From Octopus sinensis (taxonomy: Eukaryota), in assembly GCF_006345805.1 (NCBI RefSeq), contig NC_043021.1, positions 12,772,001-12,836,000 of the forward strand: DNA of 64,000 nucleotides. The letters run 5' to 3'. Both the position numbers and the translations under genes were made by a program. This document shows, piece by piece, positions 48,501 through 51,500 of this stretch. A model generated the notes under the pieces. That model saw nothing but the letters and a program-made list of their open reading frames with translations. It was not told the DNA's origin and did not search any database. Within the stretch, counting starts at the first letter, position 1. Every line of letters begins with the position of its first letter.

Positions 48501-51500
48501 AACTTCCTGATATTCAATAGATTTGAAAGGGGCCGCCTTTACATTATGCTTTGGCCTGTTTAAGCTGTGCATACTCACAAAAAGGCATACCTTTATAAAT
48601 TTACATATAAAACTAATATGACAAAATCACTTGGACATAATAGTAGGGACTGTAGCTGCTGGATACAAGACAACCTTGCTAGTGCTGTAGCCATGATAAA
48701 ATGCACCTAGCACAATGTAAAGTGCTTAGTGCAGGAACATAGGGCCAAGGCAACCCTTTAGTCCTACCAAAGACATAGAAAGTTCCCTGCCTTGGAGCCA
48801 CAATAAAAAGCACTCAGCACACACTGTAAAGTGGATCATGTTGCGAAAGAAATCCAGTCATAGACACCATGCCAAAGCTAGAACATGGAACAAGGTATGA
48901 TCACGTGATATGTCTAGACAAGGAATTATATTGAATAAGAACTGATATGGATCATAGCAATGTATCTGGAAAATTATCATTAAATTAATAACCACAAATT
49001 CTATATTTCATGCGCCTCTACTGACATGTATATAAAGCAAAGTATCAAAATGAAAATACAGAAACAATATGCTACTTACATCAGAAGTAGGATAGAGGGG
49101 TGGCGTACGAGAAACATCCGATTCTCGTCCATCTTTCATTTTTTTCCCCTTTACTTTTGATTTCTTTTTATCGACCCCACCACCTCCGTACATCATATTT
49201 CTGGAAAAGACATTTGCATGTAAATAACCTTTCGTTTTTTTCCCCTTTACTTTTGATTTCTTTTTATCGACCCCACCACCTCCGTACATCATATTTCTGG
49301 AAAAGATATTTGCATGTAAATAAGCCATAATTGAAAATAAACAATACAAAAATTAAAACATGCACAAACAGGGAAAGTTGTGACCGACACTACACCAACA
49401 ACGTACTTTATCAATCTCCCACCAAAATGTTCAATAAAACTGACGACTGAGCACTGATCAAAACTGGCAAGGACTCACTGGTAAATTATCTTAAATGATT
49501 TACTGTTTTTGTTAATTGGTTTCAGTCAATCGACTGTGTGGAGCACAATTTTAATGGCACAGTCAAATGACAAAAGATGAATAGTAATCATGATCATTGT
49601 TTAACATCCACCTTCCATGGCATGGGTTGGACGGTTTGACAGGAACTGGCCAACTCCAGCCACATTTTAACACACAACATAATGTCAGGTAAACAAGTGT
49701 TAGGATATTTTGTATAATGCACAATTGATTCTGCAATCTACTATTTAGGAAAAGTTGACAAAACACATTATTTTGCTTGCCATAAATGCTAATATAGTGT
49801 TATAATGCAGAAATAAGAAACTAATGAACTTTAGGGAGTCAAAGACGAAGCAAAAGAAAATGTGGACTGTTTCACCTATTTAAAGAGACATCTTTCAGAA
49901 TTAAATTTCATAAGATTGTGAAAAATTTGCTATATTTCTGAACTAGAAAAAGTACAACTGTTTTAGAGTTTAATGCAATAGGCAGCACTCTTTGCACTTG
50001 CTTGCTTTAAAAAGGCAGGTAAGTGGACCTTGAGCAATTTTCCTGCAGGGGGTACCCCACAAGTGCTAACAAATTTTGAAATGGGACAGGAGCATAAGAC
50101 ATATATACACAAAACCAAGGTACAAATATCTACTAATAGCATAAGTTGCATCTTGTACTGAGAGGAAAGAGAGGTGAGAGGAATTAAATACCTTAAATTT
50201 TCGTAATCGTCAACGTATTTCTTCCAGTCAAGGTTCAAGTCCTTGAGTGTGTCTTCACATTCCCATGTCGACTGGTCATAAGGTAAATCTCTCCATTTCA
50301 TTAAGTACCATACTTTCCCATCTCTTGTAACTCTGTTCAAAAACCACAAGAGATTTTGGTATATTTATGAGATAGAGAGAGTGAAAGAGAGAGAAACCAA
50401 GTGTGTGTGTTGTGTGTGTGCATGCGTGTGTGTGTGTGTGTGTGCATGCGTGTGTAGGCACATTAAGTGTTTATGCATGAATGAGTACAAATATTTTTAA
50501 TTGTGGGTTTTAGAGTGAAAGAAAGGATATAATACTATAACAGAAGAACAACGCACTTGTGGTTAATAGCTCGATGGATTTGCAACCATTCTGGTCGCAC
50601 ACCATACCGATAAAACCTTTCTTCAAGGTTTTCAATGTTATCAAAGTTTGACCGATCCTTCTGACCATAACTGCTGCCGTCTTCAAGAGGGGGTGGTTCA
50701 TCCATGTCATTTTTACGCATGTAGTTTCGATACATGGCTGGGTGATACACATCAAGCTGCAAATGCAATATGAAATACAATTAAGTTAGAAATTCTTTTC
50801 AAGAAGAGAAAGTGACATAGACAAGCAGATATTTATGCTGGGCACTGGCCACACCAATCTCATTCATCTGGCAGGGAGACCTGCAAAGGTCTAAGACACT
50901 CCCTTTCCTGATTAATTATAATTAACGAAAATTTTATTGATAACACAAACTATTTTTTTTTCCAGAAAATTTGAGTCAACCTTGATGTGATTTGAAATTA
51001 AAAATATTTATCGAAAAGCCAAACATATAGAAATGAAATTTCTTGCAAATCCAGGAGAGCAAGGCTATTTCTACCAGGTATGGAAGATTAAAAAACTGAA
51101 ATTCTCTACATTACCTGCAATTCTAGAATCCAACTACAATGCCAGTAAGACATATCTTGCCATTTAATGAAAAATTCTCGAGTGGGTTTGTGTTCCTGGA
51201 AGAAAATAAAGAAAAAAAAAAAATTTAACCTGTTGACAAGAAATCAAAAACAAAAAGTTTAAAGCATTTCCTTGTGAATCTCTTCAGTTGGTGAAATAAT
51301 ACAGTAAATTTGATAACTTGTTAAGTATTTGTTATATTTCTGAGCTGGAAAAAGTACAGCTATTTCAAAGTTTAATGCAATAGGCAGCAGTTCTTGCACT
51401 TGATCACATTAAAAAAGGAGGACATAAACCTCCTGAGCAGTCTATCTTGTAGAGTGTACCCAACTTTAGTGTTACTAACTCAAATGTTTCAAGAAGAAAC

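What the first reader, a model, noticed from the sequence alone, without database searches (positions are those of the whole stretch)
49080..49323. In-frame 96-bp duplication of a splice acceptor plus exon start creates two competing acceptors
Seen: 27 nt of intron and 69 nt of exon are duplicated with 3 mismatches. Both AGs (49297-98 and 49201-02) are in the same frame with no stop between them. Using the upstream one adds 32 aa ([32 protein letters not shown]), doubling an NLS-like basic patch in the chromodomain-ATPase linker. One mismatch creates a new AAAG|GTTATT donor at the junction, but the resulting 28-nt intron is too short and would frameshift. Established: tandem duplication across a splice site is a proposed route to new alternative splicing and intron gain. 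Inference: an early stage of that process in an essential remodeller.
Basis: partly seen in the sequence, partly recalled or inferred. Interest (0 to 1): 0.7.

Follow-up and report, generated by a model that had tools for sequence, protein, structure and literature searches.

The report
Duplicated splice acceptor in Mi-2/CHD4 gene
A 96-base stretch spanning an intron-exon boundary of an invertebrate Mi-2/CHD4 chromatin-remodeller gene is duplicated in tandem, giving two in-frame splice acceptors; the anatomy is real, but this kind of event is already known and its effect on the mRNA could not be tested here.

Summary
A 96-bp tandem duplication (minus strand, 49323-49228 and 49227-49132, 93/96 identical) spans 27 nt of intron and 69 nt of exon. 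The gene is a CHD subfamily II (Mi-2/CHD4) orthologue. Both AGs are in frame.

The exon encodes the chromodomain-ATPase linker. That linker is poorly conserved, lysine-rich, variable in length and predicted disordered. None of 17 homologues spanning the linker has the insert.

Each copy carries a branch-point-like TTTAC, the same short pyrimidine tract and CAG. Their contexts differ. The upstream acceptor keeps the native pyrimidine-rich intron. The downstream one follows 80%-purine former exon, unlike any other intron of the gene. I therefore infer that the upstream site dominates and the long protein is the main product. "Balanced competition" is not shown.

NLS function is unsupported: the mapped human CHD4 NLS lies elsewhere. 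New introns from the repeat would be 28-87 nt, against a minimum of 101 nt among this gene's 12 mapped introns.

No reads, transcripts or congener sequence for this exon could be reached, so assembly artefact and actual splice usage remain untested. The architecture has published precedents (potato RdRp, F7 minisatellite). It is a new member of a known kind, of modest interest.

The parts
49228..49323 (-). Upstream repeat copy (copy 1). It holds 27 nt of intron 3' end (49323-49297) and 69 nt identical to the exon start (49296-49228).
   Evidence: 96-bp period, 93/96 identical to copy 2
49132..49227 (-). Downstream repeat copy (copy 2). It holds 27 nt of intron-derived sequence (49227-49201) and the first 69 nt of the exon (49200-49132), which continues into unique exon sequence.
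49297..49298 (-). Upstream acceptor AG. The first exon base would be 49296. It sits in native, pyrimidine-rich intron context.
   Evidence: Y fraction 0.66 at -40..-3 and 0.65 at -96..-28; four yTnAy motifs at -57, -42, -25, -21
49201..49202 (-). Downstream acceptor AG. The first exon base would be 49200. Its core is identical to the upstream site, but it is preceded by the 80%-purine former exon copy.
   Evidence: Y fraction 0.47 and 0.20, below all 11 other introns; one yTnAy motif
49315..49321 (-). Branch-point-like TATTTAC in copy 1, with the branch A at 49317, position -21.
   Evidence: sequence read
49219..49225 (-). Branch-point-like TATTTAC in copy 2, with the branch A at 49221, position -21. 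It is the only yTnAy motif within 70 nt upstream of the downstream acceptor.
49227..49228 (-). GT created at the repeat junction (GAAAG|GTTATT). Paired with the AG at 49202-01 it gives a 28-nt, frame-shifting intron.
49080..49296 (-). Linker exon in its long form, 217 nt. The short form is 49200-49080, 121 nt. The donor is GAT|gtaagt after 49080.
   Evidence: aligned to the human CHD4 linker
50192..50332 (-). Upstream exon encoding chromodomain 2. The donor is AAG|gtattt (GT at 50191-50190), phase 2.
47998..48189 (-). Downstream exon: the end of the linker and the start of ATPase lobe 1 (…[16 protein letters not shown]…DEMGLGKT…).
9238..51773 (-). Detected extent of the Mi-2/CHD4-type gene within the window. 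It runs from the exon after PHD2 to the C-terminal exons. The PHD exons were not found.

Best explanation
A lineage-specific 96-bp tandem duplication straddles the 3' splice site of the exon encoding the chromodomain-ATPase linker of a Mi-2/CHD4 orthologue. The copies differ by 2-3%.

Each copy carries a complete core 3' splice signal: a branch-point-like TATTTAC at -21, an 8-nt pyrimidine tract, and CAG. The pre-mRNA therefore offers two acceptors 96 nt apart in the same frame. This much is shown by sequence.

The rest is inferred. The two sites are not equivalent. The upstream acceptor keeps the whole native intron context and is followed by a purine-rich, enhancer-like sequence. The downstream acceptor now lies behind that purine-rich segment. 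I expect the upstream acceptor to be used predominantly. The usual product would then carry an in-frame 32-aa insertion that repeats the lysine-rich patch. The downstream (ancestral-length) junction would be at most a minor alternative.

The insertion is tolerated because it falls in a disordered, length-variable, compositionally basic linker, not in a folded domain.
For: - The duplication and its frame are confirmed.
- Gene identity:
  - The best solved-structure match is human CHD4, E = 1.6e-65, across chromodomain 2, linker and ATPase lobe 1.
  - Pfam finds Chromo, SNF2-rel_dom, Helicase_C, DUF1087, CHDII_SANT-like and CHDCT2.
- The acceptor cores are identical from -10 to +69.
- Context differs.

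| Measure | Upstream acceptor | Downstream acceptor | Other 11 introns |
|---|---|---|---|
| Y fraction, -40..-3 | 0.66 | 0.47 | 0.55-0.89 |
| Y fraction, -96..-28 | 0.65 | 0.20 | 0.49-0.67 |
| yTnAy motifs | 4 | 1 | not counted |

- The duplicated 69 nt is 80% purine, with 14 purine hexamers. The other exons have 0-5.3 per 69 nt.
- The long exon, 217 nt, is within the gene's exon range of 118-222 nt.
- Linker tolerance:
  - In an 18-homologue alignment, the 17 that span the linker have 63-103 aa. This gene has 85 aa (short) or 117 aa (long). None has the insert.
  - AlphaFold2 gives coil with block-mean pLDDT 39-48 across residues about 118-180, next to a chromodomain at about 90.
- Precedents:
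  - In potato RdRp, a duplication across the same kind of boundary left the upstream acceptor in use (PMC4974935).
  - Identical tandem donors in F7 do not compete (PMC1557585).
- Against an assembly artefact:
  - The window has no N.
  - A 1-kb (TA)n array is assembled through.
  - There is no other such duplication in 64 kb.
Against: - No transcript, read or annotation evidence for this species could be reached.
- Which acceptor is used rests entirely on context arguments and analogy.
- The downstream copy does carry its own BP-like motif, pyrimidine tract and AG, plus the same downstream enhancer-like sequence, so substantial use cannot be excluded.
- The long linker (117 aa) would be longer than in any of the 17 homologues sampled.
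- The exon's pyrimidine tract is short, so both sites may be weak and enhancer-dependent. That makes prediction uncertain.
- A small false duplication in the assembly, or a polymorphic allele, cannot be excluded without reads.
Confidence: 0.5

Rival explanations
1. The two acceptors compete. Both are used at appreciable levels, perhaps in a regulated way. The result is two Mi-2 isoforms that differ by a 32-aa lysine-rich insert.
For: - The core signals are identical, and each copy has a BP-like motif.
- Both products are in frame.
- Both exon sizes are within the gene's range.
- The same purine-rich sequence follows both sites.
Against: - The upstream contexts are very unequal.
- Identical tandem splice sites can be used exclusively rather than competitively (PMC1557585).
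- There is no RNA evidence.
- A functional difference through an NLS is not supported by the human CHD4 data (PMC10112965).
Confidence: 0.25
2. Only the downstream, ancestral-length junction is used. The upstream copy is then a silent 96-nt addition to the intron, and the protein is unchanged.
For: - The short form has a linker length (85 aa) typical of homologues, whereas the long form exceeds all those sampled.
- An essential gene might not tolerate change.
- The downstream site is closer to the exon's donor, which could favour it under exon definition.
Against: - The upstream site has the native intron context and more branch-point candidates. It would have to be actively bypassed.
- A branch point used in copy 1 would meet the AG at 49298-97 first (PMC1431707).
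- Purine-rich sequence upstream of the downstream site is an atypical intron context for this gene.
Confidence: 0.12
3. The duplication is not in the organism's genome as drawn. It would be a small false tandem duplication, for example two allelic versions of an overlap abutted during assembly or gap closing. Alternatively it is present in only one haplotype.
For: - There are exactly 2.0 copies.
- The 2-3% divergence is in the range of heterozygosity seen in many marine invertebrates (from general knowledge).
- The junction base fits neither flank.
- No independent reads were available.
Against: - There are no N runs anywhere in the window.
- A 1-kb imperfect (TA)n array is assembled through, which suggests long reads.
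- No other such duplication exists in 64 kb, so there is no sign of a systematic artefact.
- The length is a multiple of 3. That is expected if selection filtered a real event, but it has only a 1-in-3 chance for an artefact.
Confidence: 0.12
4. This is a nascent intron of the Rogers or potato-RdRp type. The upstream acceptor is used, and a new short intron is then removed between a GT in copy 1 (or the junction GT) and the duplicated downstream acceptor.
For: - The same architecture produced a new intron in potato RdRp (PMC4974935).
- The available GTs are GAT|gtacgg, GAG|gtggtg, GTG|gtgggg, GGG|gtcgat, AAA|gtaaag and the junction AAG|gttatt.
Against: - The resulting introns would be 87, 79, 76, 71, 50 and 28 nt. 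The smallest of this gene's 12 mapped introns is 101 nt.
- Only the 87-nt option keeps the frame, and its donor is weak.
Confidence: 0.03

Closest known systems
Potato RdRp gene PGSC0003DMG402000361: tandem duplication across the intron 1 / exon 2 boundary (Ma, Lan & Niu 2016, PMC4974935)
   Same: - A tandem genomic duplication spans the 3' end of an intron and the 5' end of the next exon.
- The branch site (there too TTTAC), pyrimidine tract, AG and exonic enhancers are inherited by the second copy.
- The copies differ by a few substitutions.
   Different: - In potato, a cryptic exonic GTAAG plus the duplicated acceptor form a new intron of viable size, confirmed by 106 RNA-seq reads, WGS reads and a congener.
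- Here the possible new introns are 28-87 nt and mostly out of frame.
- The likely outcome here is an in-frame insertion or an alternative acceptor.
- No RNA or read support is available here.
Human F7 IVS7 37-bp minisatellite spanning the exon 7 / intron 7 donor (PMC1557585); similar cases cited there are the 6-16 gene, CBS, LMNB2 and PDGF
   Same: A tandem repeat whose first unit spans an exon-intron boundary reiterates an identical splice site. It is a natural cis-competition set-up.
   Different: - The F7 case concerns donors rather than acceptors, with 5-9 copies rather than 2.
- It is shown experimentally that only the most upstream site is used.
- Acceptor choice additionally depends on the branch point and pyrimidine tract.
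[quoted passage not shown] 2011, PMC3265369; Lehmann et al. 2010, PMC2891723)
   Same: A tandem duplication supplies ready-made splice signals.
   Different: - The classical model duplicates an exonic AGGT segment and intronises one copy.
- Here the duplicated piece already contains a real acceptor.
- The GT...AG spacing it offers is too short for this gene.
Human CHD4 / Drosophila Mi-2 (CHD subfamily II), linker between chromodomain 2 and ATPase lobe 1
   Same: - The exon aligns to the human segment ...[34 protein letters not shown]....
- A lysine-rich patch is followed by a PP..P..D motif, as in most homologues.
   Different: - Linker sequence and length are not conserved.
- None of the 17 homologues spanning the linker has a repeated patch.
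- The experimentally mapped NLS of human CHD4 is elsewhere, at aa 304-307 (PMC10112965).

Membership tests
CHD subfamily II (Mi-2 / CHD3-4-5) | SNF2-type ATPase (SNF2-related N domain plus Helicase_C) | tested here: met
   PF00176 at 3.1e-81 and PF00271 at 8.4e-28 on the spliced 675-aa segment. Exons were mapped.
CHD subfamily II (Mi-2 / CHD3-4-5) | Double chromodomain N-terminal to the ATPase | tested here: met
   - PF00385 hits chromodomain 2 at 1.8e-09.
- The chromodomain 1 exon gives only a weak hit.
- The segment aligns to CHD4 and CHD5 double-chromodomain structures 4o9i, 6q3m and 6guu.
CHD subfamily II (Mi-2 / CHD3-4-5) | Subfamily-specific C-terminal domains DUF1087, CHDII SANT-like (DUF1086) and CHDCT2 | tested here: met
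   PF06465 at 9.5e-24, PF06461 at 6.8e-43 and PF08074 at 5e-40, on minus-strand ORFs at about 32.8 kb, 27.4 kb and 11.5-14.5 kb.
CHD subfamily II (Mi-2 / CHD3-4-5) | Tandem PHD fingers upstream of the chromodomains | tested here: inconclusive
   - The exon immediately after PHD2 ([16 protein letters not shown]) is at 51773.
- tblastn found no PHD exon between 51800 and 64000.
- The PHD exons probably lie beyond the window end.
Alternative 3' splice sites created by tandem duplication across an intron-exon boundary | A direct tandem repeat that spans the boundary and reiterates the acceptor | tested here: met
Alternative 3' splice sites created by tandem duplication across an intron-exon boundary | Each copy carries a branch point, pyrimidine tract and AG | tested here: met
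   This is shown by sequence only. Both copies have TATTTAC with the branch A at -21, tcttttcc, and cag.
Alternative 3' splice sites created by tandem duplication across an intron-exon boundary | Both acceptors are actually used in mature mRNA | not testable with these tools
   No transcripts or reads of this species are in any reachable collection.
Alternative 3' splice sites created by tandem duplication across an intron-exon boundary | Derived state: relatives have a single copy | tested here: inconclusive
   - None of the 17 distant homologues spanning the linker has the insert.
- The only close relative found (Logan runs SRR11869384 and SRR11869391) has contigs that end at window 50236, short of the exon.
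Intron gain by tandem duplication (Rogers model / potato RdRp type) | The duplication provides a GT...AG pair enclosing an intron of viable length for the host gene | tested here: not met
   The candidate introns are 28, 50, 71, 76, 79 and 87 nt. This gene's 12 mapped introns are 101-2850 nt.
Intron gain by tandem duplication (Rogers model / potato RdRp type) | Removal of the new intron preserves the reading frame | tested here: not met
   Five of the six candidates shift the frame. Only the 87-nt option, with the weak donor GAT|gtacgg, does not.
Classical monopartite NLS | K-K/R-X-K/R motif in an accessible region | tested here: met
   KKSK and KKTK/KKMK occur in each copy. The region is predicted disordered.
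Classical monopartite NLS | Demonstrated import activity of this patch or its orthologous patch | not testable with these tools
   - In human CHD4 the functional NLS is KRKR at aa 304-307.
- Predicted NLSs in aa 570-690 added nothing detectable to import (PMC10112965).
- This argues against the patch acting as an NLS but does not test this species.

The most novel reading that the evidence does not exclude
The duplication is a very young, possibly still polymorphic allele of an essential remodeller. Both identical acceptors are used, in a tissue- or stage-dependent ratio. The doubled lysine-rich patch measurably changes Mi-2's DNA or nucleosome engagement, or its nuclear import. That would make it a natural, in-vivo cis-competition experiment between identical 3' splice sites, caught at the birth of a functional isoform.
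Probability: 0.08. Interest if true: 0.5.

Novelty: new member of a known kind. Interest (0 to 1): 0.3.

Why it matters
If the duplication is real and expressed, it is a clean natural example of how a small tandem duplication across a splice site changes a protein. The change could be a constitutive in-frame insertion or a new alternative acceptor. It happens in a highly conserved, essential chromatin remodeller, within the one segment (the disordered basic linker) that can absorb it. It also offers two identical 3' splice sites in different contexts, which is useful for testing rules of acceptor choice in a non-model invertebrate. It does not reveal a new mechanism. Comparable cases are documented in plants, flies and humans.

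Tried and rejected
- Congeners and transcripts:
  - A protein search with the 250-aa long form found only homologues at or below about 57% identity.
  - A search with the genomic ORF across the duplication found nothing.
  - Exact look-ups of 10 window ORFs and single-copy variants found nothing.
- Representative-library search: it revealed one near-identical exon ORF, P0144.
  - Its Logan contigs L001 and L002 belong to a related species. Exons are 97.6% identical and introns about 82%.
  - The contigs end at window 50236, before the duplicated exon.
- Dating against that relative:
  - If the duplication were as old as the split, about 6.5 mismatches would be expected, against 3 observed. The Poisson tail is about 0.11 by my own arithmetic on the rates.
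  - This hints that the duplication is younger but does not settle it. The last 27 nt of an intron and the coding part are constrained.
- Organism identification: a literature search on the run accession prefix returned only an unrelated accession.
- RNA secondary structure that might mask one acceptor: the 256-nt region folds no better than shuffles (z = +0.93). Rejected.
- Rfam on the whole window: no hits.
- 'No stop between the AGs' as evidence of selection: rejected, because 56 nt of the native intron are open in that frame anyway.
- Dispersed repeat or minisatellite family: rejected, because the unit is unique in the window.
- A 100-bp duplication between the flanking ATGG repeats followed by a 4-bp deletion: noted as possible, but less parsimonious than a 96-bp duplication with one altered junction base.
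- PHD-exon search in 51.8-64 kb: nothing found.
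Full report
**1. Observation**

The minus strand of 48900-49500 shows two head-to-tail copies of a 96-nt unit. Two tools agree on it.
- The repeat finder reports 95 nt at 98% identity with spacing 96.
- Tandem Repeats Finder reports period 96, 2.0 copies, 97% matches, no indels, score 368.

On the minus strand, copy 1 is 49323-49228 and copy 2 is 49227-49132. They differ at three positions.
- 49307 A against 49211 G, at intron position -11.
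- 49234 C against 49138 T. This gives ACG Thr against ATG Met, at a CpG.
- 49228 G against 49132 A, the last base of the unit.

The probability of 93/96 matches by chance is about 1e-44. The unit occurs nowhere else in the window. It is the only non-microsatellite tandem duplication of period 30-500 and at least 93% identity in the 64 kb. The window contains no N.

**2. Gene and exon context**

The surrounding minus-strand exons were mapped by reading the splice junctions and by tblastn. The probe was a conserved CHD4 ATPase segment recalled from memory.

| Exon | Coordinates (minus strand) | Note |
|---|---|---|
| Two upstream of the duplicated exon | 50756-50557 | |
| Chromodomain 2 | 50332-50192 | donor AAG\|gtattt, phase 2 |
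| Duplicated (linker) exon | 49296 or 49200, to 49080 | donor GAT\|gtaagt |
| End of linker, start of ATPase lobe 1 | 48189-47998 | |
| Nine further ATPase exons | down to 39519 | |

Family evidence is as follows.
- The spliced segment matches human CHD4 (6ryr) at E = 1.6e-65 across chromodomain 2, linker and ATPase lobe 1. CHD5 and CHD4 chromodomain structures come next, and CHD1 is far weaker.
- Pfam finds Chromo, SNF2-rel_dom and Helicase_C.
- On downstream ORFs it finds the subfamily-II-specific DUF1087, CHDII_SANT-like and CHDCT2.
- PHD-finger exons were not found between 51.8 and 64 kb. They probably lie off the window.

The gene is therefore a Mi-2/CHD3-4-5-type remodeller spanning at least 9238-51773.

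**3.

All of them check out.
- The AGs are at 49298-97 and 49202-01.
- Both give an open frame from the phase-2 donor.
- The upstream one adds [32 protein letters not shown].
- The junction reads GAAAG|GTTATT. That GT with the downstream AG gives a 28-nt, frame-shifting intron.

One qualification applies. The native intron is stop-free in this frame for its last 56 nt. The open frame through the 27 intron-derived nucleotides therefore carries no information. Only the length being a multiple of 3 does, and that has a chance of 1 in 3.

**4. What the exon encodes**

The exon aligns to the human CHD4 segment between chromodomain 2 and ATPase lobe 1...[34 protein letters not shown]....

I aligned 18 homologues. 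They are 43-57% identical to this protein, and 17 of them span the linker.
- The segment is the least conserved part of the region.
- It is usually lysine- or serine-rich.
- It varies from 63 to 103 aa between the conserved W-E of chromodomain 2 and the LHPYQ motif.
- This gene has 85 aa in the short form and 117 aa in the long form.
- None of the 17 has an insert at this place.

AlphaFold2 on the long form gives a confident chromodomain 2 (pLDDT about 90). Residues about 118-180, including both repeat copies, are featureless coil with block-mean pLDDT 39-48.

Each copy contains K-K/R-X-K/R motifs. In human CHD4, however, the functional NLS has been mapped to KRKR at aa 304-307. Predicted NLSs around aa 570-690 added nothing detectable to import (PMC10112965). 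'NLS-like' is thus a statement about composition only.

**5. Are the two acceptors equivalent?**

The cores are identical from -10 to +69, and position -11 is a purine in both. Each copy contains a good branch-point-like heptamer, TATTTAC, with the A at -21, and no AG between it and the acceptor. Both are plausible complete 3' splice sites. Their contexts differ sharply.

| Measure | Upstream acceptor | Downstream acceptor | Other 11 introns of the gene |
|---|---|---|---|
| Pyrimidine fraction, -40..-3 | 0.66 | 0.47 | 0.55-0.89 |
| Pyrimidine fraction, -96..-28 | 0.65 | 0.20 | 0.49-0.67 |
| yTnAy motifs within 70 nt | 4 | 1 | not counted |

- The downstream acceptor falls below every other intron of the gene on both pyrimidine measures.
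- The 69-nt duplicated exon part is 80% purine, with 14 purine hexamers. The gene's other exons have 0-5.3 per 69 nt.
- Both exon lengths, 121 and 217 nt, fall within the gene's range of 118-222 nt.
- No RNA structure distinguishes the sites (z = +0.93 against shuffles).

Established knowledge points the same way.
- From general knowledge, not tested here: purine-rich enhancer-like sequence helps an upstream acceptor when exonic and tends to hinder a downstream one when intronic.
- Identical tandem splice sites need not compete at all. In F7 IVS7 only the most upstream donor is used (PMC1557585).

My inference is that the upstream acceptor is the favoured one, so the long protein would be the main product. 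This is inference, not observation.

**6. Intron-gain reading**

The duplication offers six GTs upstream of the downstream AG. The resulting introns would be 87, 79, 76, 71, 50 and 28 nt, and only the 87-nt one is in frame. The gene's 12 mapped introns are 101-2850 nt.

The potato RdRp case (PMC4974935) has exactly this architecture and did yield a new intron. There, the cryptic donor lay far enough from the duplicated acceptor. Here this outcome is unlikely.

**7. Independent evidence sought**

- The large protein collection holds no transcript or genomic ORF of this species for any exon tested.
- The representative library yielded one near-identical exon ORF, P0144. It was also returned by the permitted homology search.
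- Its Logan contigs, from runs SRR11869384 and SRR11869391, belong to a related species. Exons show 11 mismatches in 465 nt. Introns are about 82% identical, with many indels.
- Those contigs end at window 50236, inside the exon upstream of the duplication. The congener test could not be done.
- Using that divergence as a yardstick gives about 6.5 expected mismatches if the duplication were as old as the split, against 3 observed. This is my own arithmetic on the rates. It only hints that the duplication is younger.
- The organism could not be named. The nearest named proteins are lophotrochozoan or ecdysozoan Mi-2/CHD homologues, from Dreissena and Priapulus.

**8. Artefact rival**

A small false tandem duplication, or a haplotype-specific allele, cannot be excluded without reads. 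Three points lower its probability to roughly 0.1.
- The window has no gaps.
- A 1-kb (TA)n array is assembled through, which suggests long reads.
- No other such duplication occurs in 64 kb.

**9. Comparison and verdict**

The feature is a real sequence feature, as far as the assembly can be trusted. It is a tandem duplication across a 3' splice site in the linker exon of a Mi-2/CHD4 orthologue.

It belongs to a documented class.
- Potato RdRp: PMC4974935.
- Drosophila novel introns by tandem duplication: PMC2891723.
- Experimental duplication in ATP2A2: PMC3265369.
- Minisatellites spanning donors in F7, CBS and the 6-16 gene: PMC1557585.

Three of its claims are not supported by what could be tested: 'competing acceptors', 'NLS doubling' and 'early stage of intron gain'.

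The most likely consequence is a tolerated 32-aa in-frame insertion in a disordered basic linker, possibly with minor use of the ancestral-length junction.

Novelty: a new member of a known kind. Interest: modest, 0.3.

Noticed in passing
window 56657-57653: An imperfect (TA)n microsatellite of about 1 kb (TRF: 500 copies, 85% matches) is assembled without gaps. Several other TA, GT and GA microsatellites occur, for example at 45937-46000, 50401-50455 and 25413-25467.
   Followed up: no
window 20275-20742 and 15726-15995, minus strand: Two ORF fragments inside introns of the CHD gene look like pieces of a mariner/Tc1-type transposase ([15 protein letters not shown]... and ...[20 protein letters not shown]...). 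Pfam gave no hit at E <= 1e-3, so the assignment rests on resemblance only.
   Followed up: partly
window 26152-26360: An intronic tandem array of a 9-bp unit (TTTTTCAGT, about 22 copies, also scored as period 36). Each unit contains a pyrimidine run followed by CAG, so it is a string of acceptor-like motifs.
   Followed up: no
window 51800-64000: No PHD-finger exons of the CHD gene are detectable upstream of the exon at 51773. The upstream intron is therefore longer than 12 kb, or the 5' exons lie off the window.
   Followed up: partly
L001 1-1711 and L002 1-1656 (Logan runs SRR11869384, SRR11869391), aligned to window 51991-50236: Genomic contigs of a related species. Exons are 97.6% identical and introns about 82% identical, with many indels. 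They are a possible outgroup for dating the duplication if its reads were mapped to the exon.
   Followed up: partly
window 49324-49328 and 49128-49131, minus strand: A 4-nt direct repeat, ATGG, immediately precedes copy 1 (...TTATGG|C) and follows copy 2 (GAAAG|ATGG). The single junction base G matches neither expected flank. This is compatible with a microhomology-associated or end-joining origin, but it was not resolved.
   Followed up: partly
window about 17363-17608 and 19044-19334, minus strand: Lysine-, glutamate- and aspartate-rich low-complexity ORFs lie between the SANT-like and CHDCT2 exons. They resemble the acidic/lysine-rich C-terminal spacer seen in other invertebrate Mi-2 proteins, for example the Priapulus protein P0125.
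   Followed up: no
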